From positions 186,001-250,000 of the IMG/VR virus record IMGVR_UViG_3300034104_003795: DNA of 64,000 nucleotides, one strand, 5' to 3'. Under the pieces are notes generated by a model. The model was not told where the DNA came from. It saw only the letters and a list, made by a program, of their open reading frames with translations, and did no database searches. This document shows, piece after piece, positions 1 through 64,000 of the stretch. Position 1 is the stretch's first letter. The number at the start of each line of letters is the position of its first letter. A program made the position numbers and the translations under genes.

Positions 1-210
1 TCCTAACGCATCAAATGGTGCCGGTTTAATTGCTTGTGGTATTACCTTTTCAACTTCTTGCGCAATTACTCCAATATCATGTCTATCAATTGGATTAAAC
101 CCTAACGAATCAACCATCTCTTTCCAATCAAAATAAACACCTCTTAATTGCTTCAACATTCCCAATGCATCACTAATTGTAGTAATATTTTCTTTCAATC
201 TTTCATCCGA
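1..210 (-). other. Peptidase S74 / intramolecular chaperone autoprocessing domain (partial)
   Basis: SDERLKENI...LRGVYFDW...IGVIAQEVEKVIPQA matches the characteristic S74 signature of phage tail fibres and tailspikes. Confidence 0.88.
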
Positions 211-44157: not shown

Positions 44158-45822
44158 TTAGATATTAGCTAAATCTTTGATGTAAATCTTTCCGTAAAAT
44201 TCTGGGCGAACCATCTTCTTAGCGTAACGAGTCATCACACCTCTACGCGGAGTAAAGTTTTGTGGGTCGTACACTAATGGAGTCATAATCAATGGTACAT
44301 ATGGAGCGTAAACAGCACCAGTCTCAAGGAAGTTATTTCCTCTGAAGCCCATTAAGATTTCGTTAGAAGTCATATAAGGGTTTTTGTACACAGTGAATCT
44401 GTTACTCATAGAACCAACTGCAGTTACACCAGCTGCGAATTGTAAAGCGTCTTTATCAGCATTTACAGTAAAGCCAGGAATTGATTCTAAAATAGTACAT
44501 ACATCAGGAGATGCAACTACGAAGTTAGCACCACCACGAAGTGTTAATTGGTGAATCTTGTTAGAAACTTTGTTCAACTTAACACCTAATGTTTGATACC
44601 AAGAATTCTTAGTATAGTAAGTGTTTGCTCCAGAAGGAACTGAAGAACCCCATGCACCTGTTCCAGTTGCACCGTTGTTTAAGTATTCTTCACCAATTGT
44701 TGCTGACCAGTATTCAGTAGTTAATGCGTTAGCTTTTAACATATCTAAAATTTCTAAATCAATCTCTAAAGAGATGTAATCAGATAACATAGAAGTTAAT
44801 TCAGCTTCTGCATCAATTGAATGGTAAGCGTTTAAGTCTTGCGCTAATTCAGGAGTCCATACTGCTTTCAACTTACGAGTCTTAGCAACGATAGCCTCTG
44901 ATTTTAATTCAAGATCAATTTCAGGAATATCTAATGCAGTTGTTGTGTTACCTGCACTGTTAGCTGTTTGGTCTTCGAAGTCACCTCTATCGTAAGATAC
45001 TGGTTGCTCAGAATAAACAACAGTTGAAGTACCAGCCGCTGCAGGTATTACACCATTAGATGCTGAAACAAATAATACTACGTTGTTAGAAGATACATAG
45101 TTAAATTCGTTGATGTTTGAATTTAAAGTACCAACGCCAATAGCAGTAACGTTAAATGAACGAACTGCTTCAGAATCAACAGTTGTAGGAAGTTGGTTTG
45201 CACCACCTGCTTTAGAAACTGTTAATTTGATGATTCTACCAGCTGCTACTGAAGCAGATAATGCACCATCAAATCCTACATCAGCCCAAGAAGCTGAAGC
45301 TGCAGTTGTAGTTAAAGAAGCTGCAGATGCATCGTTTACAGAGTAGCCATATCTAGCTTCACCATAAAGACCATTTTCAGCTGCATTAGTTCTACCAAAG
45401 TTAGTTGCAGAACCAGTTACGTTAGTACCACCAAAAAGTGATTTACCAGCGAACTGACCGTTAGCACCTTGAGAAGAACCATATTTGAAATCCAAGAAGA
45501 ATACAAGACCAGAAGGTAAGTTCATTGGTTGTACGCTTACGAATTCTTTTGCTGCGATTTCACCGAAGATTCTTCTTACTAACGGTAAAGCCACACCAGA
45601 CCACTCTTCAGAACCAGTAGAAGTACCAGTTTGAGTTGCCTCATCAAGCAATTGCTTTGCTTGGTTTTCTAACAATACAGCCATGCTGTGTTGTTCTCTT
45701 TCTTTTAAACCTTCAAGAAGACCAGTTTTTTCCCATTTGCTTTTTAACTGACGAGTTTCAGCTAACATTACTGCTTGTGGGTTTTTGCCTTCCATAAGTT
45801 TTCCTAAATCAAAATTTGCCAT
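44158..45822 (-). CDS. gp23: Major capsid protein, T4 gp23-like
   Basis: KWEKTGLLEGL...LLENQ...LPLVRR...VSVQPMNLPSGLVFFL...KTRKLKAVWTPELAQDL.AYH.IDAE.EL...PYVPL...DPQNFTPRRGVMTRYA. Confidence 0.96.
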   Translation of the reverse strand: MANFDLGKLMEGKNPQAVMLAETRQLKSKWEKTGLLEGLKEREQHSMAVLLENQAKQLLDEATQTGTSTGSEEWSGVALPLVRRIFGEIAAKEFVSVQPMNLPSGLVFFLDFKYGSSQGANGQFAGKSLFGGTNVTGSATNFGRTNAAENGLYGEARYGYSVNDASAASLTTTAASASWADVGFDGALSASVAAGRIIKLTVSKAGGANQLPTTVDSEAVRSFNVTAIGVGTLNSNINEFNYVSSNNVVLFVSASNGVIPAAAGTSTVVYSEQPVSYDRGDFEDQTANSAGNTTTALDIPEIDLELKSEAIVAKTRKLKAVWTPELAQDLNAYHSIDAEAELTSMLSDYISLEIDLEILDMLKANALTTEYWSATIGEEYLNNGATGTGAWGSSVPSGANTYYTKNSWYQTLGVKLNKVSNKIHQLTLRGGANFVVASPDVCTILESIPGFTVNADKDALQFAAGVTAVGSMSNRFTVYKNPYMTSNEILMGFRGNNFLETGAVYAPYVPLIMTPLVYDPQNFTPRRGVMTRYAKKMVRPEFYGKIYIKDLANI

Positions 45823-45847: not shown

Positions 45848-46966
45848 TTATTTTACGATACCAGCTAATTGCTTAAAGCGGTTAGCTAATTCGTTTGAGC
45901 TTTCAGCGATGATTTCTTTTGCTGGAGCTGTTGTAGCTTGTGGCTTAGAAGCAAAACCTTCGGTCATTGTCTTCTTAGCTGCTACTTTTCTTTCAGTACC
46001 AGTAAACTTCATGCTTTCTGCTAAAGTTGCGTAAACCAATTTAACTTCTCTTACAGAAGATGTTCTGTCTAAATTCTCAACTACTTTTACTTTTTGTTCG
46101 TTAGTTAAGTTGTAAGAACGGAACAATTTGTTTGCGTAAAGTAATTTTGCGTTTAACAAATTTACTTCATTAATAGTGCCTTTTAAAGATTTGATTGTAG
46201 AAATTGCTTCTGCCAATTCTGCTTGAAGTTTTTCTTTTTCTTCATCATGCTTTGGTTCTTCAGCTTCTTTAACTTCTTCTTCATCATCACCATATCCCAT
46301 TTCACGTAAGATTTCATCTAAGTCGATTTCTTCTTCTTCGTGAGCTGGTTCTTCAGTTGGAACTTCTTCAGCTTCAACTGCAGGCTCAGCAGCTACTGGT
46401 TCTTCAACCGGTGCTTCTTCACCTTCTACTGCTGGTTCTTCTTCGTGATATTCATCACCTTCTTCACCTGCAATTTGTGCTTCTAATTCTCTAATGATTG
46501 ATTCTAAATCTAATTCGTCTTCGTCATCAGATTCTTCATCATCACCAAATTCAGGAGCATCTTCACCTTCTGATTGGTATTCAGCTGCATCTTCTGCTTT
46601 ATCTTCTGCAGAAGCTTCATCTTCAACTTCATTAAGGTCTTTAACTTTATCGTAGTCTTCTACTTCACCACCTACTTCCGCAGATTGGTTAGCAATACCA
46701 CTTAGGTCAGTGTCATCGTTGTTTGCTTTATCAGCTGGTTGTTTGTTATCACCACCACCAATTTCGCTTGATACATCATTGTTTTCTTCAACTTTATCTT
46801 CAACTTCTTCGTCATCAGCCATTTCTGCCTGAAGTTTCTTAGAAAGGATAGATTGTAATCTTGGAGTAAATGCTTCTTCAAGAGCGATTTTAGCGTTAGC
46901 AATAGCAGTTTCACGAACAGCTTTAGCATCAGCGATGGCTTCTTTCAACAATTTTGAACTTGCCAT
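45848..46966 (-). CDS. Prohead core scaffold protein (gp22-like)
   Basis: Very acidic, coiled-coil ends (LLKEAIADAKAVRETA...; INEVNLLNAKLLYANKLF...KLVYATLAES), immediately upstream of the capsid gene. Confidence 0.82.
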   Translation of the reverse strand: MASSKLLKEAIADAKAVRETAIANAKIALEEAFTPRLQSILSKKLQAEMADDEEVEDKVEENNDVSSEIGGGDNKQPADKANNDDTDLSGIANQSAEVGGEVEDYDKVKDLNEVEDEASAEDKAEDAAEYQSEGEDAPEFGDDEESDDEDELDLESIIRELEAQIAGEEGDEYHEEEPAVEGEEAPVEEPVAAEPAVEAEEVPTEEPAHEEEEIDLDEILREMGYGDDEEEVKEAEEPKHDEEKEKLQAELAEAISTIKSLKGTINEVNLLNAKLLYANKLFRSYNLTNEQKVKVVENLDRTSSVREVKLVYATLAESMKFTGTERKVAAKKTMTEGFASKPQATTAPAKEIIAESSNELANRFKQLAGIVK

Positions 46967-47156: not shown

Positions 47157-48476
47157 TTAGAAAAGATAAATATAAGATGGGTGTTTATCATCTTTTAGTT
47201 TTTGACGGATTCTTTCATCCGAACACCCAAAATGTTCTCCGGCCTCTTTAAGAGAGCAGAATTGAATTCCTTCACACTCAATTATTGGAAGGTGTATTTT
47301 TATTTTTGAACGTAATTGTAATTCGTTCATTTCATCGTAACTGATATCATTACGTTCAACTTTTTTCCAATGACGATATACTGGATTATTTGATTCAAAG
47401 TAGTTTCTAGCTTCTGATTCTGATATTCCTAATTTATCCGCCACCTGTTTTGGGTTCTCAAAAGGAACTCCATCTATTTCGTATTTAATTGTTGGATTAG
47501 TTTCTTCACCAATGATTTGCCAATCTTTGTATTTTGATTTAGTAGAACGGCATCTTCTTTCAACTTCACTTGCCACCAATTCATTTGGATTAATATCAAT
47601 CGCAGCTTCTCTAAAACTTCTATAAGATTTACCATCAACCACACATTTAAACGTATCACCGTTTACAATAGATTCGGTTGCAATATCAGGATTGCCTTTT
47701 ACGAATACCAATATGTTTTGATGAACCGATGCCACTTTGCGATTTCTTTCAAAGTATGTATCAACAACTCTTGATGCTTGGTGTTGTGAATTAAATAGAA
47801 TCATATCGTTGTAGAAATGTAATCCAGCTTCTTCACAAGCTCTAATCGTTTTCCAGACCAAACCTTTATACTTTCCAATCTTATAATTTCCTGTGGTTGA
47901 TTGTTCTCTTACTTCCGATACAACTACTGCAAAGAAACGATTATCTTTTAGTTTTTCTGCAGCTTTTCTTAAAATGGAATAATATTTTTTATCAAACGAA
48001 TCCTCATCCATATTTGAAAGGTCAGCCGGATTATCGGTATATTTCTCTAAATCATAATAAGGTGGACAAGTAAACACAAAATCCTGAGTTTTGTTTTGTA
48101 TTGAATCGATTACCCATTCACTATCGCCTTGTATCCAATTTGGTTTTGTAGATTGTTTTTTGTTTGCTTCAATTTGTTCATCAGAAAGGTCTATACCGTT
48201 ATAGATGTATCCCATTTCAGTTGCAACTATACCTCTAACACTACCACCTGCAAATGGGTCCAATACTCTACCTTCCTCTGGACAAAACCATTCATACATC
48301 TTTTCACAAAGTGTAGCATCAAATATGGAAACGGTATTATCTTCCCAAAAACGGGCTCTACTTTGGGTATTTTCCCTACCCAATTCTGATTGGATATTGT
48401 AGGTGTTAATCCACCATCTTTTACGTTCTTGCCATTCTTTAGAACGAGTATCTAAAATAGAGAAAGGTTTAATCAT
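47157..48476 (-). CDS. DNA amino-methyltransferase (N6-A/N4-C type) fused to three NUMOD1-like HTH modules
   Basis: Motif I LDPFAGGS and motif IV FTCPPYY. C-terminal CVVDGKSYRSFREAA, YEIDGVPFENPKQVADKLGI, IECEGIQFCSLKEAGEHFG. Start moved from 48491 to the ATG at 48476 because the track's extension overlaps the promoter. Confidence 0.85.
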   Translation of the reverse strand: MIKPFSILDTRSKEWQERKRWWINTYNIQSELGRENTQSRARFWEDNTVSIFDATLCEKMYEWFCPEEGRVLDPFAGGSVRGIVATEMGYIYNGIDLSDEQIEANKKQSTKPNWIQGDSEWVIDSIQNKTQDFVFTCPPYYDLEKYTDNPADLSNMDEDSFDKKYYSILRKAAEKLKDNRFFAVVVSEVREQSTTGNYKIGKYKGLVWKTIRACEEAGLHFYNDMILFNSQHQASRVVDTYFERNRKVASVHQNILVFVKGNPDIATESIVNGDTFKCVVDGKSYRSFREAAIDINPNELVASEVERRCRSTKSKYKDWQIIGEETNPTIKYEIDGVPFENPKQVADKLGISESEARNYFESNNPVYRHWKKVERNDISYDEMNELQLRSKIKIHLPIIECEGIQFCSLKEAGEHFGCSDERIRQKLKDDKHPSYIYLF

Positions 48477-48480
48477 AACA

Positions 48481-48512
48481 CAAATATACAAAAAAAGTTT
48501 GGAATTACCAAA
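48481..48512 (-). promoter_or_regulatory. Bacteroidota-type primary-sigma promoter
   Basis: Coding strand TTTG-N20-TATATTTG-TGTT-ATG matches the established -33 TTTG / -7 TAnnTTTG consensus with 19-21-nt spacing. Confidence 0.75.
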
Positions 48513-48528: not shown

Positions 48529-49443
48529 TTATTCGAAATCAGGACTTTGTTCTACGTCCTTATATAAATTATCAATATATTTTCTTTCTATATCTGCCAA
48601 ATTTCTTCTATACATTTCCAATTGATTAGTTCCCTTTTTCAAAAGTGGCATCATAGCTTCCTTTTTCTTTGGGTTCTTTTCAGCAAAGTATTTAGCACCC
48701 ATAGCTCTTTGTGCATCTTCTAATTCTCTAACTTTCTTTTGTACTGCTAAGTATTTTACATACATTTTAGGTACACCACCATATAAACCAGCTTCATTTA
48801 CTACTCCTTCCGGTACACAATTTGGAACTTGTCTACCACCCTTATTTTTCATACCAACTTGCTTATATCCTTTCCAACAAGGTGAATCTTCTTTTATTGA
48901 CTCACTTTTAACAACTTTTCCTTTTTGTTTAAAAAGTTGTTTAATATCATCTTGCGCATTTGGGTCATTTTTTCTCCACTTTTTAATTAAATCAAATAAT
49001 TTTCTTTCATCAGAACTATTCAATGGAGCAAGTTTACCTTTACCACTTCCCAATGCCATACCATTTTTGTACCAATATTCAAAATCTTTTACGTCATCAA
49101 ATAACCAAGTTGGTAAAACTCTTATATTAAATGATTCTTTTATTGAACCTTCGTTTGTTCCGTATTCGTGGTAGTTTCCAGCTGCTTGAGAAATATAGTT
49201 TTCTGCTTTAGAGATATGGTCTTGAATCCAAGCTGGTATTTCTTTTTCATTCTCACCCATTTTAGCTTTCAATTCAGTTGCCATCTTAATAATGGTATCT
49301 AATTGATTTTGTCCCATAGAAACTTCGTGGTCTTCACCTTCAGCTTCTTTAATGAATGCAGTTGCAAATGGATTAGAAATTACTTTACCCATTTCAAATT
49401 TACCAAATGCTTTTTGATTTACTAATCCACCTAACTTAATCAT
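48529..49443 (-). CDS. Modular internal head protein (304 aa)
   Basis: ORF track; DHEVSMGQNQL...AWIQDHISKAENYI and PCWKGYKQVGMKNKGGRQVPNCVP modules separated by IKE/VNE sites; lies in the head cluster. Confidence 0.7.
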   Translation of the reverse strand: MIKLGGLVNQKAFGKFEMGKVISNPFATAFIKEAEGEDHEVSMGQNQLDTIIKMATELKAKMGENEKEIPAWIQDHISKAENYISQAAGNYHEYGTNEGSIKESFNIRVLPTWLFDDVKDFEYWYKNGMALGSGKGKLAPLNSSDERKLFDLIKKWRKNDPNAQDDIKQLFKQKGKVVKSESIKEDSPCWKGYKQVGMKNKGGRQVPNCVPEGVVNEAGLYGGVPKMYVKYLAVQKKVRELEDAQRAMGAKYFAEKNPKKKEAMMPLLKKGTNQLEMYRRNLADIERKYIDNLYKDVEQSPDFE

Positions 49444-50004: not shown

Positions 50005-50598
50005 TTATGCTATTTCAGTTATTATTTCTCTCATTAGGTCTTGTGCCTTGCAGTATTCTCCACAAACATCAGTACCAATATTTTTTAGTGGATTTACGGA
50101 TTCGTTCATTGGGACCATAAATGCACCATGTGTAGATGGGTTAGAAACAAAATCCCAACCAATCAATTCAAAGTCTTCTTGTACTTCCACTTTATTTCCA
50201 CTCATAGGTCTAGTTGAACCCATACCTCTTGAAGAAATACCTAATAGAATTCCAGCTTTTAATAACTCTTTAAGAATGTTACCAGATGGAGTTCCTAATA
50301 TTTCAACAGTCCCACAAAGGTCATCACCTTCCCACCAAATTTCTCTGATGTTATGTGATACGTTCTTTAAGTTGATAACCGTTGAATCTGGATGGTCTAA
50401 TTCACCCAATGCTCTACGTTCTTTAATAAACGTTAAATATTTTTTTGCTTCTCTTTCAAGAATTGGTTTTGGATACACTCTACCATTTTGGTTCTCGGCA
50501 CCAGCTCTTTGTAGAACTCCTTTTACCAAAGTTCTTCCACCTTCATCTTCTTTTATTTTACCTTCAAATAGGTGTGTTTCTATTAATAATGATTTCAT
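50005..50598 (-). CDS. gp21: Prohead core protease, T4 gp21-like
   Basis: GVLQRAGAENQNGRVYP...ALGELDHP...VSHNI...GISSRGMGS...WDFVSNPSTHGAF. Confidence 0.93.
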   Translation of the reverse strand: MKSLLIETHLFEGKIKEDEGGRTLVKGVLQRAGAENQNGRVYPKPILEREAKKYLTFIKERRALGELDHPDSTVINLKNVSHNIREIWWEGDDLCGTVEILGTPSGNILKELLKAGILLGISSRGMGSTRPMSGNKVEVQEDFELIGWDFVSNPSTHGAFMVPMNESVNPLKNIGTDVCGEYCKAQDLMREIITEIA

Positions 50599-54560: not shown

Positions 54561-54998
54561 TTACCATTTTCTACAAGACCAATATCTTGCTTTTGTTCTT
54601 GGACCGGGATTATCACAATTGTGTCTTGCTCTAAAATTAGCCCTTCTACCAGGATTATTTTTCTTAATTTTTACCCCTTTCTGTCCAAAGTTTACTTTAA
54701 TAACTTTACCAGTTTTAGGATTTTTAACATATACCTTAAACTTTTTCACATCACCTGCCATTGGTTTACCCAATTTCACTTCTCTACCTTGATATTCGGC
54801 TTCAAAAACACAACTACAATTAGCTTCATCTAATGATTGTGAATATGCTTTAAGATAATTGATAAAATCATCCATATCTTCTTGCTCTACATCCAATTCA
54901 TCATAATCATCAATTGGATTATCAGCCGGTTGGTCTCCTTTTGAATATGCTTTATCTACATATTCATCTTCTTTTAGGATATTTGTTAATTTAATCAT
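54561..54998 (-). CDS. Head-module protein: acidic N-half, basic Cys-containing C-domain (145 aa)
   Basis: EAEYQGREVKLGKPM...KVNFG...RRANFRARHNCD...KARYWSCRKW; AAGGAG upstream of the ATG. Confidence 0.75.
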   Translation of the reverse strand: MIKLTNILKEDEYVDKAYSKGDQPADNPIDDYDELDVEQEDMDDFINYLKAYSQSLDEANCSCVFEAEYQGREVKLGKPMAGDVKKFKVYVKNPKTGKVIKVNFGQKGVKIKKNNPGRRANFRARHNCDNPGPRTKARYWSCRKW

Positions 54999-57394: not shown

Positions 57395-60310
57395 TTAAGA
57401 ATCAAAAAATATTCCTAAAATTTGATTTAATGGTGCGAATGCACCTGTTAATTTGTAAGTGTTACCACCATATACGAATACAATACCTTCGTTTGGTACA
57501 ATCTTATCAAATCCACCCAAAGCATTTAAACGTTCTAACTCTAATTTTAATTTTGCAATCTTTTTAGGGTCACCACTTGCTTTTACTTGTTGAATTGTAG
57601 ATTCCAAACGAGCTACCATTTGTCTTTTGGCACTATCAGGATTTGCTGTAAGTACCGAACTCATAAATGATAATACATCTGCACCAACTCCTAAAAATAT
57701 CTCCTCAAATCTCATTAGATTTTGCTTTGATATCTTTTGTTGGTCTTGTTTATCAGTTTGTTCAGCCCAAGCTCTTAATTTAGTATCTTGTATTGTGTTA
57801 ATACGGAAACTCTTGTCACCAAAAGCCCATCTCTTAACCAATCCTATTTTTTCTTGTGTATCTAATTTTTTTGCATTCTTTTCAACAAACTTAGTCCACC
57901 ATGCTTGATGATAATCCGCTACTCCATCCGAATCACTTAATGTAAATTCAGATTGAAGTTTACTAATCATAGAAATATACTTTCCTTGTAATTTAGAAAG
58001 ATGTTCTGATTTAGGTAACTTATTCATTGGTGGGCCTTGAATTGTGTATTTAGATTGTACGTGCGCATTTACTTGCTTAATCATACCGCCTAATATAGTT
58101 GCCGCTTGCTGATTCTCACCTACGATAGTACCATCAATATCGTAATCAAAAGTACCATGAAACACTAATAGCGGTTGATTGTAGGGGATTACATTTACGG
58201 AGGTTGGATATATTACTTCCAAATTCATAAACGAACTACCATCCTTAAATATCTTTTTACGTTGAGGTTCTGATAGAGCTGCAATTGCTTTAGATAAATC
58301 CTGCATAGCGAAATTGTAAGCATCTGTTAATCCACCTCTACCGGCAAATTTAGCAGCCACTTGTCCTATTGTCATAGCACCTTCGCCTTTGTTCTTTAAG
58401 TGTGATTTGTTACGAGCTGCAACTAATCTACCATTTACCCAACTAACTGCTAATGCTTGTCCATCGGTCTTCTCTCTTGCCAATTCTAAATCACCATTCA
58501 ATGCTCTTACCACAATTTGTTTAAGGTCACCAAATGTTAAACCCATCTCAATATCAAATGGATGTGCCATATGTCCATACGCACCACCTTCCAAAATTAA
58601 ACTCTCACTTAAAGATTCTTTTTTAACTTTTTTAAGTTGTGCCATTATTTTATCTAACTCTGCTCTTACTTTTAATTGAGCAGGTGAATTTGGCATCATT
58701 TTAAGTGCTTTAAGAAATAATCTATCTCTTTCTCTTTCTAACTCTTTTACTCCTTCATTGAATGGAATTTCTATTTTAGAAAGTTTACTATAATAATTTG
58801 GGTCTTCGTATAAATGGTCTAATGCAATTTCTTTTGCTATATTAACATCGGTTGTATGTTCTCTTTCAACGGCGTATCCTTTTATGAATTCGTTCTTTAA
58901 AGTTTGTGGACTGATATTATGGTGTTTAGCAATATCTTTTAAGGTCATACCCTTTGCTAATCCACCAGGTATCTGGTCTTCTTTTACCGGTTGATATTCT
59001 TCACTATCATCTTTATTCAATTTAGATTTTAATTTCTTAACATCTTTCGGATTTGGTGCACCATTAATATATCCACCTGGTAAACTTAAACCAATACCAG
59101 CCCCACCACCTAATCCCATTTCATCTAATATTTGAGATTCTATTTCATCCATAATTTCATTTATGTCTTGTTTTGAAATTATTTGAGGTTTTTGGTTTTT
59201 AGGAAGTTCCCAAAATCTTTTAGGTTTTTCCAATGGAGTATCTCTATTGGTTTCTTCCCAATCCTCAACGGTATGTGGGTCATCGGCAGGATTTAATGTA
59301 CTTTGTACTACATTATTAACTTTATAATAAGCCTTTCTAAATTGTGTTTCCGTATCTTTTGATTTACCCTTACCTCTCATAGCATCTGCTTTTGGAGTAT
59401 GCAATTGTATATATCCACCCTGATTAAACCAAGGTTCCGGTTTTGTTACGTTTAATAATCTAATTTTCCCATCAGGAATATATCCAGTATCAGGCTCACC
59501 TGCATCTGCTGCGTATCCGCCCATACCAGTGCTTTCTTTTAGGTTTTCTTTTTTAGGAATTCTAAAAGTTACTGCTTTCTTACCATTGATTGTTGGCATT
59601 CCCCATTCATCCTCACCTATTGATTTAACAACTACTTTTTTATTTTTGAATTTACCCATTAACAAAGTATCACCAACTTTTACGTTTAGTTTAATTTCTT
59701 CGTTAATAGATTCTTTTAATTTTTTTAATTTAAGAGTTATCAGTTTGAATACTTGGTCATCAAACTTTGGATATGCTTTTGTAAAGTTTTTCTTTCTATC
59801 GGCAGCACTACCCGCGCTTAACCAATAACGAACATCAGTTCCGCTAATTGGATTGGGTTGAGCAGGTGCTGCATAAACGTATCCTCTATCTAAATACCCA
59901 GTATCTACTTTACCTTTATATTGTTTAAAGTATTTACCGCTTAAACGAGATGCATCTTTTTCACCTACCACCGTTATAAATCCAGTAGTATCTGAATCAA
60001 ACTTATTAAGTATCTCTTCTGGAGCATAAGGATTTTTAATATTGACTATTTTGTTTGATGGGATACCAAACATTGTTGTCATTATTGCTTTCTTTTCCTT
60101 AAAATTAAATGGAGATTTTTTTGAATCGGTAACATTAGAAGTTCCGATATATACGCTATCTTTACCGAATTTTTTAACCAAATGGTCATAGGTTGCGTAG
60201 TGACCTTTATGAAATGGTTGAAAGCGGCCAGAATAGACAACAACTACTTTGTCCATTCCTGCCGCTTCTCCCAATATTGTTTCTACTAAAAATTTTGCTA
60301 ATCCCTTCAT
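57395..60310 (-). CDS. Multi-domain protein: HxGH nucleotidyltransferase + DUF5661-like module + ATP-dependent ligase-like (KxDG) domain
   Basis: N-terminal YSGRFQPFHKGH; middle IPGGLA...VEREHT...EIALDHLYEDPNYYSKL; C-terminal EKTDG...ARNK...NLEVI...VFHG...EGIVF...YKLTG. Start set at MKGLAK (60310) because the track's start overlaps the promoter motif. Confidence 0.78.
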   Translation of the reverse strand: MKGLAKFLVETILGEAAGMDKVVVVYSGRFQPFHKGHYATYDHLVKKFGKDSVYIGTSNVTDSKKSPFNFKEKKAIMTTMFGIPSNKIVNIKNPYAPEEILNKFDSDTTGFITVVGEKDASRLSGKYFKQYKGKVDTGYLDRGYVYAAPAQPNPISGTDVRYWLSAGSAADRKKNFTKAYPKFDDQVFKLITLKLKKLKESINEEIKLNVKVGDTLLMGKFKNKKVVVKSIGEDEWGMPTINGKKAVTFRIPKKENLKESTGMGGYAADAGEPDTGYIPDGKIRLLNVTKPEPWFNQGGYIQLHTPKADAMRGKGKSKDTETQFRKAYYKVNNVVQSTLNPADDPHTVEDWEETNRDTPLEKPKRFWELPKNQKPQIISKQDINEIMDEIESQILDEMGLGGGAGIGLSLPGGYINGAPNPKDVKKLKSKLNKDDSEEYQPVKEDQIPGGLAKGMTLKDIAKHHNISPQTLKNEFIKGYAVEREHTTDVNIAKEIALDHLYEDPNYYSKLSKIEIPFNEGVKELERERDRLFLKALKMMPNSPAQLKVRAELDKIMAQLKKVKKESLSESLILEGGAYGHMAHPFDIEMGLTFGDLKQIVVRALNGDLELAREKTDGQALAVSWVNGRLVAARNKSHLKNKGEGAMTIGQVAAKFAGRGGLTDAYNFAMQDLSKAIAALSEPQRKKIFKDGSSFMNLEVIYPTSVNVIPYNQPLLVFHGTFDYDIDGTIVGENQQAATILGGMIKQVNAHVQSKYTIQGPPMNKLPKSEHLSKLQGKYISMISKLQSEFTLSDSDGVADYHQAWWTKFVEKNAKKLDTQEKIGLVKRWAFGDKSFRINTIQDTKLRAWAEQTDKQDQQKISKQNLMRFEEIFLGVGADVLSFMSSVLTANPDSAKRQMVARLESTIQQVKASGDPKKIAKLKLELERLNALGGFDKIVPNEGIVFVYGGNTYKLTGAFAPLNQILGIFFDS

Positions 60311-60314
60311 ATCA

Positions 60315-60323
60315 TATAAATAT
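60315..60323 (-). promoter_or_regulatory. Late-promoter-type motif
   Basis: TATAAATAT on +, 4 nt from the proposed ATG. Confidence 0.55.
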
Positions 60324-60348
60324 TGGAGATTATTGTTTTGCAAAATTA

Positions 60349-60754: not shown

Positions 60755-61507
60755 TTATTTTTTAAATACCGAAACTCCTTTTTCTTTTACAACTTCTCCG
60801 GCACAATAATTAGCCCAATCAATAGATTCTTCTACATTATTAGAATCCAAATACCTGGATACAAATCCGGCTACAAATGTATCACCCGCTCCACTTACAT
60901 CGGCATTTTGAATTCTTTTAGTTCCAATTATCTTACCTCTATAACTTGCTCCCCTACCGTCCAACGTAATGATACATTTATTATATAACCAATCAGTATC
61001 TCTAATAATAGAATCATTATTTTGAGCTTCAAATCTGTTTATTTTTATAAAGGATGTGTTTTTACACCAATCACCTAAATGCTTTTTGGTATCTACTATC
61101 GTAAATTTGGCCATAGATGATATCTTATCAATATCTTCTTCGGTTAGGAATCCCTTACAATAATCCGATATAACAACCGCATCATATTTTACCAAATCCG
61201 GCAAATCGTAGATATCAATTCTATTTGTAGTATCATTTTCATCAACTCGCAAATATAATTCATTTGTATCTTTGTTTACATATCGTGTTTTAGTAATATT
61301 ACCTTTATCAAAATATGTATCAACATCCAATCCCATAGCTTCTAAATTAGATGCTGTGTTGCCCGCCATTCCTTTACTCCAAACTTTTAATTCATCTATT
61401 GGTAAGAAAACTGGTCCATTTCCTTCTGGAGATTTTCTACTTGTTATGCCATACCAAAAAATATCGGTACAAACCTCTCCAATAACTAAAACTTTATACT
61501 TACGCAT
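60755..61507 (-). CDS. hldA: D-glycero-beta-D-manno-heptose-7-phosphate kinase (HldE/RfaE domain I, PfkB fold)
   Basis: VIGEVCTDIFWYGITSRKSPEG (HldE: [22 protein letters not shown]), VISDYCKGFL, DVSGAGDTFVAG. Confidence 0.85.
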   Translation of the reverse strand: MRKYKVLVIGEVCTDIFWYGITSRKSPEGNGPVFLPIDELKVWSKGMAGNTASNLEAMGLDVDTYFDKGNITKTRYVNKDTNELYLRVDENDTTNRIDIYDLPDLVKYDAVVISDYCKGFLTEEDIDKISSMAKFTIVDTKKHLGDWCKNTSFIKINRFEAQNNDSIIRDTDWLYNKCIITLDGRGASYRGKIIGTKRIQNADVSGAGDTFVAGFVSRYLDSNNVEESIDWANYCAGEVVKEKGVSVFKK

Positions 61508-61889
61508 TATGTATTAAATTTGAAGTACTGAATCCTTCTATTTTTTCAAAGTATTTAATTTCTTTGGCAAATTCTTTACCTATTATTTTTTTATTCTTAT
61601 ACTCATCACCAATTACAAAAAAATCAGGATTGTATCTTTTAATTTGTTCTTCTAATTGTTTATCACTTCCAAATATTACAACTATATCAACACCTTCTAT
61701 TTGCATTAAGTTAAACACTCTTTGACCTTCGGTATGAAAAGGTCTATCAGTTCCTTTTAGTTCTTTTACTCTAATATCAGAATCAATACCAATAACCAAT
61801 TGGTCACCTAATGATTTTGCGTATTCAATTAGTTTAAAATGACCGTAGTGTAAAATATCAAAACAACCGTTAATCCAAACTTTTTTCAT
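61500..61889 (-). CDS. hldC: D-glycero-beta-D-manno-heptose-1-phosphate adenylyltransferase (HldE/RfaE domain II)
   Basis: NGCFDILHYGH...YAKSLGDQLVIGIDSD..VKELKG.DRPF...GFSTSNLI. Confidence 0.85.
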   Translation of the reverse strand: MKKVWINGCFDILHYGHFKLIEYAKSLGDQLVIGIDSDIRVKELKGTDRPFHTEGQRVFNLMQIEGVDIVVIFGSDKQLEEQIKRYNPDFFVIGDEYKNKKIIGKEFAKEIKYFEKIEGFSTSNLIHNA

Positions 61890-63037
61890 TATAAGAATTT
61901 TTCCAACTCTTTTATTACCATTTCAGATGTAATACTTTTAGTACATTCAAATTGTCTTTCAGTATCTTTATGGTCAGGACACCAATTCCAATCACCGGCA
62001 TCCAATTTAACTCTATTAAAACATCCTTCACATTTTCCGTCAGGTGCACCAATTCTAATACAATCTTCCATCTCTGCCCATCTATAAGAGAATCCACTTA
62101 TTAATACCGTTGGTACATCTAATGCCCAACTCAACCAACTCAAACCACTACCAATACCAATAAATGCTTTTGATTTTTTCATTTCATCCATTACTAATTC
62201 AATTGGACCGTTTGGATGATGAATTACTCCTATTGGTAATTTATTTCCCATATAGTTATCACCTTCTTTAGAAAGTAATTTTACTAAATAACCCCTACCA
62301 ATCAACCAATCAACTACTTCTTGCCAACCGGTTGGATTGTTCCAAAATTTAGATTGCGCAGTACCATAAGTTGCAATACAAACCTGTTTAATATCATTAT
62401 CTATTTTTACAGGTCTTTGTTTTACTTTTGGTTTTATTTCTTTAAATTCTAACCCAAGTATATCAGAACACATTTTTTGCATTGTTACTGATTTTGGGTC
62501 TGCTGGATTTTTGAATCCATTTACCGAACCATTTTCATTATAAAATAGTCCAACCGAATACATCGCATATAAATTAGGAACAGGTGTACCAGGTTGTACA
62601 AACTCAATATCAGGATATTCTCCTAAAAACATATCGTTCATAAAGGTAGATACTATTACTTCACATTTATGCTGCTTTTTAAATTCTTGTACATAAGGTA
62701 TCCAGGCTAAACTATCTCCCAATGCTTTTGAATCCATTGCAATATAAACTCTCTTACCTTCGGCGTTAAATACCATACTATACCATTCTACGCCATTTTC
62801 GTAAATAACAATTTTCCATTCAATAAAATACTGAATACTACATCTACACCAACAATTGTTATCTATGCTTGTTGTATAGCAAATTTGACCGGTTTTATTA
62901 TTAATAAAATCAACTTTATAATTTGCCTTCTTTGGTCCTTTAATTTCTACAAAAGGACCATTAATAAAATGTATAAGTACATTGTTATTTATTTCCCTAA
63001 TGCTTTTATTATTTTTTTTAAGATTATCGTAAATCAT
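61889..63037 (-). CDS. tibC: Autotransporter-type protein O-heptosyltransferase (Aah/TibC family)
   Basis: N-terminal beta domain (..QYFIEWKIVIY..), ALGDSLAWIPYVQEFKKQHKC, FIGIGSGLSWLSWA...VLISGFS, and the four-Cys iron-finger CEGCFN...WNWCPDH...QFECTKSI. Start set at the TAATG overlap (63037). Confidence 0.88.
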   Translation of the reverse strand: MIYDNLKKNNKSIREINNNVLIHFINGPFVEIKGPKKANYKVDFINNKTGQICYTTSIDNNCWCRCSIQYFIEWKIVIYENGVEWYSMVFNAEGKRVYIAMDSKALGDSLAWIPYVQEFKKQHKCEVIVSTFMNDMFLGEYPDIEFVQPGTPVPNLYAMYSVGLFYNENGSVNGFKNPADPKSVTMQKMCSDILGLEFKEIKPKVKQRPVKIDNDIKQVCIATYGTAQSKFWNNPTGWQEVVDWLIGRGYLVKLLSKEGDNYMGNKLPIGVIHHPNGPIELVMDEMKKSKAFIGIGSGLSWLSWALDVPTVLISGFSYRWAEMEDCIRIGAPDGKCEGCFNRVKLDAGDWNWCPDHKDTERQFECTKSITSEMVIKELEKFL

Positions 63038-64000
63038 TAACTCCAAGTTTTTACTGTTTGGTCTATAAGAGAATATCCTTCGGATTGTTTACAATATACT
63101 TTATTTGTTGTATATCTAAGCTTTGGTTCTTTGTAAAACACATCAGTAAGCCATAAATCAAATCCTTCCCACGGCGTATCATTGAATCTATCAATCCACC
63201 ATTGTTTAGTTCGATTTGGTATTAAGTATGCATGTGCTAAATCTTGATTTGCTGCAGTTTTACTGAATAGTTCATCAACTTTTTCTTTATTTCTAGAACT
63301 ATTATTTGCCAATCCAACATAGTAAACATCATCTCTTTCCGATATAAAACAAGCCTTATTTACTATATCCACAAATTCTTCTAAACCGGTATAAATAAAT
63401 GCATCTGCTTCAAATATCAAAGTATAATCATATTCATCGCTCATTGTTTCCAAAGCCTTTCTATGAGCAGAAAAACATCCATAATGTCTGCCAGTTAAAG
63501 GTCCTAATCCATTTCCAAAATTACCAGGTTTATCTGATATATGTTCTGGTCTTTTACAATGTTCGGATGGTGGAGTTTGGTCATATGGTTTGTTTACCAT
63601 TGGTAGATAATCAATACCATATTTTGATAATTGTTTTAAAGATGCTCTACTCACTCTTTCTCTAACATCATCTGGTCTAGTTAATAGGTGTCTAACTTGT
63701 ATTTTTGGTTTTCTACGAATAAATGAACGAAATCCTTCTTTAAATTGCCCATAGAAGAATTCATTTGCCGCTTGTGTAACTCCGTGAAATACACCATAAT
63801 CATCACCACTTACAATTCCACCTGGTTTAACTTTATTATACCAAAATTGTAAATCTTCTTTTAATGCATCGTAACTATGACCAGCATCTAACATTATATA
63901 ATCTATACTTCCATTTGCAAACTGATTAGATGCATTTTTAGAAGTATCTTTAATCATATTGATATTATCATAGTTATCTGATAATATTGTGTTATCAATA
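63037..64000 (-). CDS. SAM-dependent methyltransferase (Methyltransf_24-like) fused to a GT25-like glycosyltransferase; 5'-partial
   Basis: IDYIMLDAGHSYD...FWYNKVKPGGIVSGDDY, then HYGCFSAH...YTLIFEADA. The frame stays open upstream of 63957 to the window end (IDNTILSDNYDNIN). Confidence 0.75.
   Translation of the reverse strand, partial: IDNTILSDNYDNINMIKDTSKNASNQFANGSIDYIMLDAGHSYDALKEDLQFWYNKVKPGGIVSGDDYGVFHGVTQAANEFFYGQFKEGFRSFIRRKPKIQVRHLLTRPDDVRERVSRASLKQLSKYGIDYLPMVNKPYDQTPPSEHCKRPEHISDKPGNFGNGLGPLTGRHYGCFSAHRKALETMSDEYDYTLIFEADAFIYTGLEEFVDIVNKACFISERDDVYYVGLANNSSRNKEKVDELFSKTAANQDLAHAYLIPNRTKQWWIDRFNDTPWEGFDLWLTDVFYKEPKLRYTTNKVYCKQSEGYSLIDQTVKTWS

What the first reader, a model, noticed from the sequence alone, without database searches (positions are those of the whole stretch)
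57395..60310. Head-module protein combining two unrelated nucleotidyltransferase folds
Seen: an HxGH (cytidyltransferase/NMNAT/PPAT superfamily) domain and a KxDG...EGIV...K covalent-nucleotidyltransferase (ligase-like) domain. They are joined by low-complexity linkers carrying (I/L/V)-x-E sites (ILGE, LKESINE, ILDE, VKE, LSESLILE), and the gene has a late-type motif next to the terminase genes. Inference: a polyprotein packaged in the head, cut by the prohead protease and injected. Plausible roles are RNA/DNA repair or cofactor (e.g. NAD) restoration against host defences; the substrate is unknown.
Basis: partly seen in the sequence, partly recalled or inferred. Interest (0 to 1): 0.65.

Follow-up and report, generated by a model that had tools for sequence, protein, structure and literature searches.

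The report
Phage head polyprotein carrying repair enzymes
A jumbo phage encodes a 971-residue protein that strings an NAD-synthesis-like enzyme and a new kind of RNA-ligase-like enzyme together with linkers that look like cutting sites for the phage's own head protease. It therefore looks like a ready-made repair kit that is packed into the capsid and delivered with the DNA, though nobody has yet shown that it is packed.

Summary
Window 57395-60310 (- strand) is one 971-aa gene.

- **N-terminal domain (res 20-199):** an HxGH nucleotidyltransferase, closest to archaeal/NadM NMN adenylyltransferases.
- **C-terminal domain (res 575-971):** a covalent (lysine) nucleotidyltransferase whose best structural neighbours are all RNA ligases. 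Motifs I, III, IV and V are invariant. A roughly 170-residue helical insert matches no described Rnl family, and no Pfam model hits the domain.

The polyprotein reading is well supported by comparison but not proven.
- The first 10 residues (MKGLAKFLVE) resemble the T4 capsid targeting sequence (MKTYQEFIAE).
- The same kind of leader precedes at least five unrelated first modules across the family.
- Every module boundary lies in a low-confidence linker that carries a conserved (L/I)-x-E site. Before the ligase-like domain, P3 is L/I in 135 of 142 sites and P1 is E in 110 of 142.
- The phage encodes a T4 gp21-type (S77) prohead protease.
- The gene shares an ATATTTATA upstream motif with structural genes.

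Relatives fuse the same ligase-like domain to a polynucleotide-kinase-like domain, an HD domain and a CCA-adding enzyme. This points to RNA (tRNA) repair. NAD+ restoration is weaker, because no Nampt, PnuC or Nudix partner exists in the genome. No virion proteomics exist for this phage. Verdict: a new variant of a known kind.

The parts
57395..60310 (-). Whole gene, 971 aa plus stop codon: a modular polyprotein.
   Evidence: The ORF appears and its translation. A 99%-identical protein of 971 aa covers it fully.
60315..60323 (-). ATATTTATA, a promoter-like motif shared with structural genes, 4 nt upstream of the ATG.
   Evidence: All 7 coding-strand copies in the window are intergenic and lie upstream of genes. 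They include the genes starting at 22278, 39266, 44037 and 52710.
60266..60310 (-). N-terminal leader, residues 1-15 (MKGLAKFLVE/TILGE). It is a candidate capsid targeting sequence and propeptide with two (L/I)-x-E sites.
   Evidence: The leader is conserved in homologues whatever module follows it. T4 IPII and IPIII begin MKTYQEFIAE. Residues 10-17 have pLDDT below 50.
59714..60253 (-). HxGH (cytidylyltransferase-like) nucleotidyltransferase domain, NMNAT-like, residues 20-199. HKGH lies at 60200-60211 and ISGTDVR at 59828-59848.
59687..59713 (-). Linker 1, residues 200-208, carrying LKE|SINE| sites.
   Evidence: pLDDT is below 50. At site 200, P3 is conserved in 86/90 and P1 in 77/87 sequences. 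A Glu always lies 7 residues before the V.VGDT module.
59570..59686 (-). Small beta (SH3-like) module V.VGDTLLMGKFKNKK..., residues 209-247.
   Evidence: The module recurs in 31 family representatives, sometimes as the first module directly after the leader. It is 62% identical to a stretch of huge-phage record LR756502. Four short strands are predicted, with pLDDT about 60.
58964..59569 (-). Long disordered region, residues 248-449, with conserved ILDE (397) and VKE (444) sites.
   Evidence: pLDDT is below 50. Conservation is 37/43 and 37/44 for P1 Glu.
58769..58963 (-). DUF5661 helical module, residues about 450-514.
   Evidence: Pfam PF18905 scores E 2.2e-11. The module is a separate gene with a leader in Flavobacterium phage immuto. 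In Vibrio phage VPs20 it lies inside a DUF2213 protein between the terminase gene and a DUF2184-annotated gene that I take from recall to be the capsid gene.
58589..58759 (-). Helical hairpin, residues 518-567, followed by linker LSE|SLILE| (residues 567-574).
   Evidence: Residues 566-577 have pLDDT below 50. Before the next domain, P3 is L/I in 135/142 and P1 is E in 110/142 sites.
57398..58588 (-). RNA-ligase-like covalent nucleotidyltransferase domain, residues 575-971. It starts GGAYGHMAHPFD. Motif I KTDG lies at 58460-58471, motif IV EGIV at 57479-57490 and the motif V Lys953 codon at 57452-57454. A helical insert spans about residues 770-935.
50005..50598 (-). Prohead protease (T4 gp21 family, Peptidase_S77), the presumed processing enzyme.
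   Evidence: phrog_207 scores E 8.5e-50. PF03420 scores E 6.8e-28.
44158..45822 (-). Major capsid protein. Its N-terminal region is rich in L-x-E sites, an internal reference for the protease's specificity.
   Evidence: phrog_138 scores E 4.4e-73. It has 6 L/I-x-E sites in residues 1-61 and 4 in residues 62-554.

Best explanation
The gene encodes a late-expressed modular polyprotein of a jumbo T4-like phage (274 kb).

**Proposed mechanism.** A 10-15-residue N-terminal leader of the T4 capsid-targeting type directs it into the prohead core. The phage's gp21-type (S77) prohead protease then cuts after Glu in conserved (L/I)-x-E sites within the disordered linkers. This releases separate modules:
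- an NMNAT-like HxGH nucleotidyltransferase
- a small beta module
- a DUF5661 module
- an RNA-ligase-like lysine nucleotidyltransferase whose new N-terminus would be GGAYGH...

The pieces stay in the head and enter the cell with the DNA. Repair enzymes would then be present before any phage gene is expressed.

**Proposed function.** The ligase-like module most likely reseals RNA, probably tRNA cut by host anticodon nucleases. The NMNAT-like module transfers AMP from ATP to a phosphate acceptor. That acceptor may be NMN, giving NAD+, or another phosphate acceptor linked to the ligase reaction.

**What is shown and what is inferred.** Shown here: the two folds and their catalytic motifs, the disordered linkers, the conservation and placement of the sites, the portable leader, the protease gene, and the shared upstream motif. 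Inferred: packaging, cleavage, ejection, RNA as the substrate, and the acceptor of the N-terminal domain.
For: **Folds.**
- N-domain: PF01467 at E 8.6e-9. NMNAT structures are the best sequence matches and structure matches.
- Motif residues are invariant.
- Profile alignment places the motif I Lys on T4 Rnl2 K35 and Rnl1 K99, and the motif III Glu on the FEF Glu of Rnl1 (E159 in the published numbering, from recall).

**Polyprotein design.**
- Every conserved (L/I)-x-E site (15, 200/204, 397, 444, 569/574) falls in a segment with pLDDT below 50.
- Before the ligase-like domain, P3 is L/I in 135/142 and P1 is E in 110/142 cluster representatives.
- A Glu precedes the beta module in all 31 cases.

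**Leader.**
- MKGLAKFLVE compares with T4 IPII/IPIII MKTYQEFIAE.
- A leader motif occurs in 85/141 family representatives against 48/241 ORFs of the same genome (p = 3.5e-15). It precedes NMNAT-like, beta, ligase-like, kinase and other modules.
- In another phage (L007), separately encoded CTP_transf-like and ligase-like proteins share the leader M..IGPY(I/L)I.E. A third, 282-aa protein shares its first part (MVQFGPY) but lacks the terminal Glu.

**Protease and context.**
- An S77 protease gene is present.
- The capsid protein propeptide region is rich in L-x-E sites.
- The gene lies directly upstream of the terminase, portal, protease, scaffold and capsid genes on the same strand. It carries the ATATTTATA motif found upstream of structural genes.
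- The location is syntenic in a relative.

**RNA repair theme.**
- Relatives fuse the same C-domain to AAA_33/Zeta-type kinases, HD domains and PolyA_pol (CCA-adding) domains.
- P0171 has all of these plus the NMNAT-like and DUF5661 modules.

**Background from papers.** T4 internal proteins carry a 10-residue CTS removed by gp21 and are ejected into the host (PMC9026906, PMC3012670, PMC10229621).
Against: - No virion proteomics exist for this phage or its cultured relatives. Literature searches found nothing.
- 27 of 142 clusters have Cys (16) or Met (11) instead of Glu before the ligase-like domain, while keeping Leu-Leu. Part of that motif may therefore be structural rather than a cleavage site.
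- (L/I)-x-E is a short motif. A 10-residue leader match to T4 has little statistical weight on its own.
- Sequence-level support for ligase kinship is weak. hhalign E-values are 0.06-0.1. Pfam RNA_ligase is sub-threshold in 7 of 40 members. Foldseek E is about 1e-2.
- T4's own RNA repair enzymes (Rnl1, Pnkp) are cytoplasmic and not packaged (my own knowledge).
- The genome has no Nampt, PnuC, Nudix or KptA. The NMNAT-like domain therefore belongs to no known phage NAD+ pathway.
Confidence: 0.6

Rival explanations
1. It is a cytoplasmic multidomain enzyme that is never packaged. The two catalytic domains work together in the infected cell on RNA ends or on a nucleotide cofactor. The leader is merely an amphipathic helix, and the (L/I)-x-E motifs are ordinary linker or structural sequence.
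For: No direct evidence of packaging was found. The Leu-Leu before the ligase-like domain is kept even where Glu is replaced by Cys or Met, which suggests a structural role. NMNAT-like and ligase-like units stay together as fusions or as neighbouring genes, as expected for cooperating enzymes. The known phage RNA repair enzymes are cytoplasmic (my own knowledge).
Against: The leader is portable in front of at least five unrelated modules. It is shared by separately encoded proteins in one phage. All conserved sites fall in disordered linkers. An S77 protease and an L-x-E-rich capsid propeptide are present in the same genome. The gene lies at the head module behind a motif shared with structural genes.
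Confidence: 0.25
2. The N-terminal domain belongs to the neighbouring sugar-nucleotide cluster and activates a sugar phosphate for glycosylation of virion or host structures. It is not an NMN adenylyltransferase. The neighbouring cluster comprises a PfkB kinase, a heptose-1-phosphate adenylyltransferase-like protein, a GT9-like glycosyltransferase and a methyltransferase, at 60755-63957.
For: Adjacent genes carry PfkB, CTP_transf_like, GT9 and methyltransferase domains. The same neighbourhood (glycosyltransferase, methyltransferase, PfkB) precedes the homologue P0171. The domain scores far below the NMNAT equivalog cut-offs, 34 bits against 397. Only the two motif regions align to NMNATs.
Against: The best sequence and structure matches are NMN/NaMN adenylyltransferases and PPAT, not sugar-phosphate nucleotidyltransferases. 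The cluster already has its own adenylyltransferase (61500-61889). The domain travels with the ligase-like domain in phages that lack this cluster.
Confidence: 0.1
3. The C-terminal domain is not an RNA ligase. It is instead a DNA ligase, an mRNA capping enzyme, or a protein- or nucleotide-adenylylating enzyme built on the same fold.
Against: RNA ligases fill the top eight non-helical ranks and the top of the Foldseek list. There is no OB-fold domain, because the protein ends 18 residues after K953. The fusion partners in relatives are RNA-end enzymes: an AAA_33 kinase, HD, and a CCA-adding enzyme with its RNA-binding domain.
Confidence: 0.15

Closest known systems
T4 internal head proteins (IPI, IPII, IPIII, Alt) with capsid targeting sequences processed by gp21
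   Same: Both have a short N-terminal leader of the form M-K-x-hydrophobic-x-x-F-hydrophobic-x-E (T4 MKTYQEFIAE; here MKGLAKFLVE). Both phages have a gp21-family S77 protease, cleavage-type (L/I)-x-E sites, and cargo unrelated in sequence behind a shared leader. Both cargoes are presumed anti-defence proteins. T4 background comes from PMC9026906 and PMC3012670.
   Different: T4 cargoes are single small proteins, or one enzyme in the case of Alt. Here several enzymes are strung in one 971-aa chain (up to 1930 aa in relatives) with internal sites. The cargo is RNA or nucleotide enzymes, not restriction inhibitors or an ADP-ribosyltransferase. Packaging is untested here.
Polyvalent proteins of phages and conjugative elements (Iyer et al. 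2017, PMC5512222)
   Same: Both are large multidomain proteins in phages that use a portal-terminase packaging system. Both are encoded near head genes and are predicted to be packaged and injected. Both show variable domain strings around conserved modules.
   Different: None of that class's typical anchor domains (MuF, ParB, ArdC-N, zincin peptidases, ARTs) was found in this protein. [quoted passage not shown] Here the modules are separated by protease-type sites and preceded by a T4-type leader. A separate 1412-aa ParB-containing protein elsewhere in this genome is the more classical polyvalent type.
ATP-dependent RNA ligases (T4 Rnl1 and Rnl2, Naegleria NgrRnl/Rnl5, Trypanosoma REL1, fungal Trl1 ligase domain)
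   Different: No Pfam RNA ligase model reaches threshold. A helical domain of about 170 residues is inserted between motifs IIIa and IV, instead of the N- or C-terminal accessory domains of Rnl1-5. The N-terminal motif GGxGHxxHP(F/Y)(D/E) is unique. Motif V has a single Lys. The family is viral only, and its distant kin carry DUF6267.
Archaeal/NadM NMN adenylyltransferases and phage NAD+ reconstitution pathways NARP2 and NARP3
   Same: GRFQPFHKGH and ISGTxxR are almost identical to MJ0541 and NadM. The Rossmann-like fold matches NMNAT and NadD structures. Phages use NMNAT-type enzymes to rebuild NAD+ (bioRxiv 10.1101/2024.02.11.579819; PMC13464706).
   Different: Scores lie far below the NMNAT equivalog cut-offs. 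The central substrate-binding part does not align. Many family members replace HxGH with GxHH. The genome lacks Nampt, a PnuC transporter and Nudix. No search was made for an NR kinase domain. The domain is fused to, or encoded next to, an RNA-ligase-like enzyme.
Processed head and ejection proteins of giant phages (phiKZ, 201phi2-1, SPN3US)
   Same: A gp21-related protease cuts many head-internal proteins after Glu at short motifs, often at several sites per protein. Enzymes such as virion RNA polymerase subunits are among the packaged, ejected cargo (PMC9026906, PMC5694885).
   Different: Those phages use an (S/A/G)-x-E-type motif, as I recall from the papers. Their cargo includes no RNA ligase or NMNAT-like enzyme that I know of. 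This phage is T4-like in its portal, protease and capsid genes rather than phiKZ-like.

Membership tests
HxGH (cytidylyltransferase-like, PF01467) nucleotidyltransferase superfamily | The N-terminal (H/T)xGH motif following a G-x-F-x-P strand. | tested here: met
   GRFQPFHKGH occupies residues 28-37. G28, F30, P32 and H37 are invariant in 43 homologues. H34 is replaced in GxHH variants.
HxGH (cytidylyltransferase-like, PF01467) nucleotidyltransferase superfamily | The C-terminal ISxTxxR motif. | tested here: met
   ISGTDVR occupies residues 155-161. T158 and R161 are invariant. The motif aligns to YSGTEIR of MJ0541.
HxGH (cytidylyltransferase-like, PF01467) nucleotidyltransferase superfamily | A Rossmann-like fold and a Pfam score above the gathering threshold. 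| tested here: met
   The Pfam score is 36.1 bits against a cut-off of 21. Foldseek gives probability 1.00 and target-normalised TM 0.5-0.66 to NadD, NMNAT and PPAT structures.
NMN adenylyltransferase (archaeal/NadM equivalogs) | A score above the curated equivalog cut-off. | tested here: not met
   The best scores are 34.4 bits against a cut-off of 397 (NF003786) and 24 bits against 181 (TIGR01527).
NMN adenylyltransferase (archaeal/NadM equivalogs) | NMN-binding residues, and NAD+ synthesis from NMN and ATP. | not testable with these tools
   Only the two motif regions align to solved NMNATs. An enzyme assay is needed.
Covalent (lysine) nucleotidyltransferases: ATP-dependent RNA/DNA ligases and capping enzymes | Motif I KxDG with the catalytic lysine. 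| tested here: met
   KTDG occupies residues 614-617. K614, D616 and G617 are invariant. The motif aligns to K35 of T4 Rnl2 and K99 of T4 Rnl1.
Covalent (lysine) nucleotidyltransferases: ATP-dependent RNA/DNA ligases and capping enzymes | Motifs III, IV and V in canonical order on the canonical strands. | tested here: met
   E698 lies on a strand, E941-G942 start a strand and K953 lies on the next strand. All are invariant. E698 aligns to the FEF Glu of T4 Rnl1, which is E159 in the published numbering, cited from recall. Motifs IV and V were not aligned at residue level. The structural alignments span them.
Covalent (lysine) nucleotidyltransferases: ATP-dependent RNA/DNA ligases and capping enzymes | The nucleotidyltransferase fold. 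| tested here: met
Covalent (lysine) nucleotidyltransferases: ATP-dependent RNA/DNA ligases and capping enzymes | Formation of a lysyl-AMP intermediate. | not testable with these tools
   A labelling assay with wild-type and K614A protein is needed.
Described RNA ligase families Rnl1-Rnl5 (Pfam RNA_ligase, RNA_lig_T4_1) | A family-model score above threshold, and the family's accessory domain. | tested here: not met
   The window protein has no hit. PF09414 appears only sub-threshold, best E 0.003, in 7 of 40 homologues. The accessory element is an inserted helical domain, not an N- or C-terminal one.
DNA ligases and mRNA capping enzymes | An OB-fold domain following motif V. | tested here: not met
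   The protein ends 18 residues after K953. The model shows only a short helix after motif V.
T4-type capsid-targeted internal head proteins | A leader of about 10 residues ending in (L/I)-x-E, shared by unrelated cargo. | tested here: met
   MKGLAKFLVE compares with T4 MKTYQEFIAE. The leader is portable across modules and across separate genes.
T4-type capsid-targeted internal head proteins | A gp21-family prohead protease in the same phage. | tested here: met
   The gene at window 50005-50598 matches PF03420 Peptidase_S77 at E 6.8e-28.
T4-type capsid-targeted internal head proteins | Presence in virions in processed form, and ejection into the host. | not testable with these tools
   No proteomic data were found.
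Polyvalent proteins (Iyer et al. 2017) | A multidomain chain in a portal-terminase phage, encoded with head genes. | tested here: met
   The protein has five or six modules. It lies next to the terminase and portal genes.
Polyvalent proteins (Iyer et al. 2017) | The class's characteristic domains: MuF, ParB, ArdC-N, ART, zincin peptidase and others. | tested here: not met
   None was found in this protein by Pfam or PHROGs.
Phage NAD+ reconstitution pathways NARP2 and NARP3 | Partner enzymes: Nampt (NARP2), or a PnuC transporter plus an NR kinase domain (NARP3). | tested here: not met
   PF04095, PF04973 and PF00293 find nothing in the 274-kb genome, although the control genomes ring. No search for an NR kinase domain was run.

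The most novel reading that the evidence does not exclude
A large, virus-only protein family is a capsid-delivered RNA repair kit. A T4-type targeting leader loads a polyprotein into the prohead. The prohead protease cuts it into free enzymes. These are a new kind of RNA ligase and, in relatives, a polynucleotide kinase, an HD phosphoesterase and a CCA-adding enzyme, together with an NMNAT-like adenylyltransferase. The enzymes enter the cell with the DNA, so tRNA cut by host nucleases can be repaired before any phage gene is expressed.

A bolder version adds that the NMNAT-like module works directly with the ligase. It might regenerate an NAD+ donor for it, or adenylylate RNA phosphate ends, rather than simply topping up cellular NAD+.
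Probability: 0.35. Interest if true: 0.85.

Novelty: new variant of a known kind. Interest (0 to 1): 0.7.

Why it matters
Phage counter-defence by packaged proteins is known for restriction inhibitors and for ADP-ribosyltransferases. RNA repair in phages is known only as a cytoplasmic activity expressed after infection begins. If this family is packaged, it would show that phages pre-load RNA-repair enzymes, and perhaps cofactor enzymes, into the capsid. It would also show that a T4-type leader plus protease sites can serve as a general cassette system for assembling such cargo.

The family also defines an uncharacterised RNA-ligase-like group. It comprises about 1,700 clusters at 50% identity, is found only in viruses and has no Pfam model. 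Its unusual inserted domain makes it a direct target for enzymology. The portable leader and sites could be useful for loading foreign proteins into capsids of non-model phages.

Tried and rejected
- **Family libraries on the C-domain.** Pfam, NCBIfam and PHROGs gave nothing usable.
- **Profile search of the PDB with the C-domain alignment.** It returned only spurious helical matches, ribosomal protein eS6 and TetR, to the insert.
- **hhalign of the family profile against T4 Rnl2 and Rnl1.** It gave correct motif I and III registers but negligible probability. I use it only for register, not as evidence of homology.
- **DUF6267 (PF19782).** It is carried by distant kin in the ESM Atlas but does not match this genome.
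- **Position-weight search of the genome for further copies of this gene's exact leader.** It found none. A looser T4-like pattern found 4 coding-strand ORFs against 0.4 expected.
- **Sigma-70 promoter scan.** No excess over shuffles, 22 against 20.4.
- **Total count of ATATTTATA.** It is not significant by itself. Only the placement of the copies is.
- **Literature searches.** Searches for Mel-JY01, DUF5661, DUF6267 and for virion proteomics combined with RNA ligase found nothing.
- **NAD+ pathway and RNA 2'-phosphotransferase partners in the genome.** All absent.
- **CCA-adding enzyme and Rnl2-type ligase in the genome.** Absent.

Full report
**Where the window lies.** The window is bases 186001-250000 of a single 273,997-bp virus record that CheckV rates as complete. 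All genes of the region run on the - strand. The terminase, portal, prohead protease and capsid proteins are of the T4 type. The nearest cultured relatives by large terminase are Flavobacterium phage immuto (57% identity) and Microcystis phage Mel-JY01 (55%).

**The gene.** The ORF at 57395-60343 has an ATG at 60310 that gives 971 aa. Metagenomic proteins of the same length and 99% identity confirm that start. More than 3,000 homologues were found. Their lengths range from about 890 to 1,340 aa, because the middle part varies.

**N-terminal domain (residues 20-199).**
- Pfam CTP_transf_like scores E 8.6e-9, above its threshold. PHROGs "cytidyltransferase" families score E 1e-13.
- The best solved and curated relatives are NMN adenylyltransferases of the archaeal/NadM type.
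- A profile of 43 homologues reaches MJ0541 NMNAT at E 1.2e-7. Both signature motifs align: GRFQPFHKGH, and SGT(D/E)(V/I)R.
- In the whole-protein model this domain is confident. Foldseek gives probability 1.00 to NadD, NMNAT and PPAT structures.
- It is therefore a true HxGH nucleotidyltransferase. Its place within the NMNAT family is not established. The equivalog scores are far below cut-off. The central part does not align. Many relatives carry GxHH instead of HxGH.

**C-terminal domain (residues 575-971).**
- No family library recognises it.
- An exhaustive HMMER search found 1,721 clusters at 50% identity. The roughly 395-residue unit stands alone in some proteins and ends proteins of 470-1,930 aa in others.
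- An alignment of 40 diverse copies gave a model with pLDDT 93.9.
- The invariant residues are those of ligase motifs I (K614-x-D-G), Ia (R633), III (E698), IV (E941-G942) and V (K953). They sit on the expected strands.
- Profile alignment to T4 Rnl2 and Rnl1 has negligible statistical weight. It does, however, put K614 on K35 and K99, and E698 on the FEF Glu of Rnl1, which is E159 in the published numbering (cited from recall).
- The domain ends 18 residues after motif V, so there is no OB fold.
- A helical domain of about 170 residues is inserted between motifs IIIa and IV. The conserved start is GGxGHxxHP(F/Y)(D/E). Both features set it apart from Rnl1-5.
- The ESM Atlas shows the family to be viral only. 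Distant kin carry DUF6267.

**The middle.**
- A small beta module occupies residues 209-247. It recurs in many relatives.
- About 200 residues follow with no confident structure.
- A DUF5661 module occupies roughly residues 450-514.
- A helical hairpin occupies residues 518-567.
- DUF5661 is a separate gene in phage immuto. In Vibrio phage VPs20 it sits inside a DUF2213 protein. That gene lies between the terminase gene and a DUF2184-annotated gene, which I take from recall to be the capsid gene.

**Is it a polyprotein cut by the prohead protease?** Four independent observations bear on this.

1. *Site placement.* The segments with pLDDT below 50 are 10-17, 200-208, 248-383, 391-449, 514-517 and 566-577. 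The family-conserved (L/I/V)-x-E sites are at 15, 200/204, 397, 444 and 569/574. Each such site therefore lies in a linker at a module boundary.
2. *Conservation across distant relatives.* Before the ligase-like domain, P3 is Leu or Ile in 135 of 142 sites and P1 is Glu in 110 of 142. Stand-alone versions also carry a short N-terminal extension that ends in ...L-x-E just before GG. The beta module is always preceded by a Glu seven residues before its V.VGDT motif, whether it is internal or the first module.
3. *The leader.*
   - Residues 1-10, MKGLAKFLVE, match the form of the T4 IPII/IPIII capsid targeting sequence MKTYQEFIAE, which I read from the T4 genome.
   - A leader motif occurs in 85 of 141 family representatives. 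It occurs in 48 of 241 ORFs of this genome (p = 3.5e-15). It precedes NMNAT-like, beta, ligase-like, P-loop kinase and other modules.
   - In a different phage (locus L007), separately encoded CTP_transf-like and ligase-like proteins share the lineage-specific leader M..IGPY(I/L)I.E. A third, 282-aa protein shares its first part (MVQFGPY) but lacks the terminal Glu. T4 internal proteins show the same pattern of one leader on unrelated cargo.
4. *The machinery.*
   - The phage has a Peptidase_S77 (gp21) protease.
   - Its capsid protein has six L/I-x-E sites in residues 1-61 and four in the remaining 493.
   - The gene carries ATATTTATA just upstream. All seven coding-strand copies of this motif in the window are intergenic and lie upstream of genes, several of them structural genes.
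   - The T4 precedent comes from PMC9026906, PMC3012670 and PMC10229621: a 10-residue CTS, removal by gp21, and ejection of the internal proteins and Alt.

**Points against.**
- No proteomic evidence exists for any relative.
- Sixteen clusters have Cys and eleven have Met instead of Glu before the ligase-like domain, while keeping Leu-Leu. Either those lineages are not cut there, or they use another enzyme, or part of the motif is structural. In the Met variants a Lys-Glu lies four residues upstream.
- The motifs are short.

I put the packaging-and-processing model at about 0.6.

**Function.**
- The strongest clue is the company the ligase-like domain keeps. Among 44 varied relatives, 12 carry the CTP_transf_like domain, 5 a Zeta-toxin-type kinase, 4 an AAA_33 kinase, 3 PolyA_pol (CCA-adding) and 3 HD.
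- One protein, P0171 (1,930 aa), reads: leader, NMNAT-like, DUF5661, AAA_33 kinase, HD, CCA-adding enzyme with its RNA-binding domain, ligase-like. It lies in the same genomic position as the window gene.
- Kinase plus phosphoesterase plus ligase is the healing-and-sealing logic of T4 Pnkp and Rnl1. A CCA-adding enzyme repairs tRNA 3' ends. This is established knowledge, reviewed in PMC9503650 and PMC7824862.
- In this genome a homologous kinase module is a separate gene at 116481-117275. Its N-terminus ends ...IITE|GVDDPGILK, like the first module of P0184.
- I therefore favour RNA as the ligase's substrate, most likely tRNA.
- The NMNAT-like module stays with the ligase-like module, as a fusion or as a near neighbour. 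The genome has no Nampt, PnuC, Nudix or KptA. It thus fits none of the known phage NAD+ pathways (bioRxiv 10.1101/2024.02.11.579819; PMC13464706). Its acceptor substrate remains open.

**Comparison with known systems.** The closest concepts are T4 capsid-targeted internal proteins and the "polyvalent proteins" of Iyer et al. 2017.
- None of its anchor domains occurs in this protein.
- I found no paper describing packaged RNA-repair enzymes, this ligase-like family, DUF5661 or DUF6267.
- I rate the finding as a new variant of a known kind. The principle, head-packaged and protease-processed effectors, is known. The cargo, the cassette architecture and the ligase-like family are new.

Noticed in passing
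window 60755-63957 (- strand): Directly upstream of the polyprotein gene lies a sugar-nucleotide cluster. It comprises a PfkB kinase (60755-61507), a 129-aa heptose-1-phosphate adenylyltransferase-like CTP_transf_like protein (61500-61889), a GT9-like glycosyltransferase (61889-63046) and a methyltransferase/GT25-like protein (63037-63957). The kinase and the adenylyltransferase look like a split HldE. A similar set precedes the homologue P0171 in another contig.
   Followed up: partly
window 54561-54998 (- strand); genome 1906-2625 (outside the window): A 145-aa protein between the large terminase and portal genes begins MIKLTNILKE. It ends in a basic, Cys-containing domain (phrog_7595). A 239-aa ORF elsewhere in the genome begins MIKLTNILNE but is otherwise different. 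These are two more candidates for capsid-targeted internal proteins.
   Followed up: partly
window 9715, 22298, 22320, 39293, 44060, 52751, 60315 (- strand): All seven coding-strand copies of ATATTTATA are intergenic and lie just upstream of genes. The motif is a candidate late promoter element. It differs from T4's TATAAATA.
   Followed up: partly
window 1-9045, 11089-22278, 23289-35843, 39495-43655 (- strand): Four giant ORFs lie downstream of the head and neck genes, of more than 3015, 3729, 4184 and 1386 aa. They are presumably tail or fibre proteins and were not examined.
   Followed up: no
window 47157-48491 (- strand): A DNA-methyltransferase-like gene (phrog_498 E 2e-62, phrog_12517 E 4e-78) sits inside the head module, between the gene for an unassigned 304-aa protein (48529-49443) and the scaffold-like gene (45848-46966). 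A terminator-like hairpin sequence lies upstream of it.
   Followed up: no
genome 164593-168831 (- strand, outside the window): A 1412-aa protein begins MNVSQLINEILTE. It contains a ParB-like DGHHR motif and long acidic, low-complexity stretches. It looks like a classical polyvalent protein. Its N-terminal module resembles the start of a 353-aa immuto protein encoded near that phage's terminase.
   Followed up: no
genome 116481-117275 (- strand, outside the window): A 264-aa AAA_33-type P-loop kinase has an N-terminus ending ...AEIITE|GVDDPGILK. It is homologous to the first module of the ligase-bearing polyprotein P0184. Here the module is a separate gene.
   Followed up: partly
genome 85230-92009 and 171074-171460 (outside the window): An array of 26 tRNA genes covers all 20 amino acids, and the genome also has a tmRNA gene. 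The phage invests heavily in translation independence, which fits a conflict over tRNA.
   Followed up: no
locus L002 (Flavobacterium phage immuto) 5606-14681: A run of genes upstream of the terminase gene have N-termini ending in (L/I)(L/I)-x-E. Examples are MKKSQLRQIIKE for the DUF5661 protein, MKKVMGNLADLLLEE for an NT5C nucleotidase, MENFDLKKFLVE and MADNFNLRSFLTE. In that phage the cargo may be encoded as separate leader-bearing genes.
   Followed up: partly
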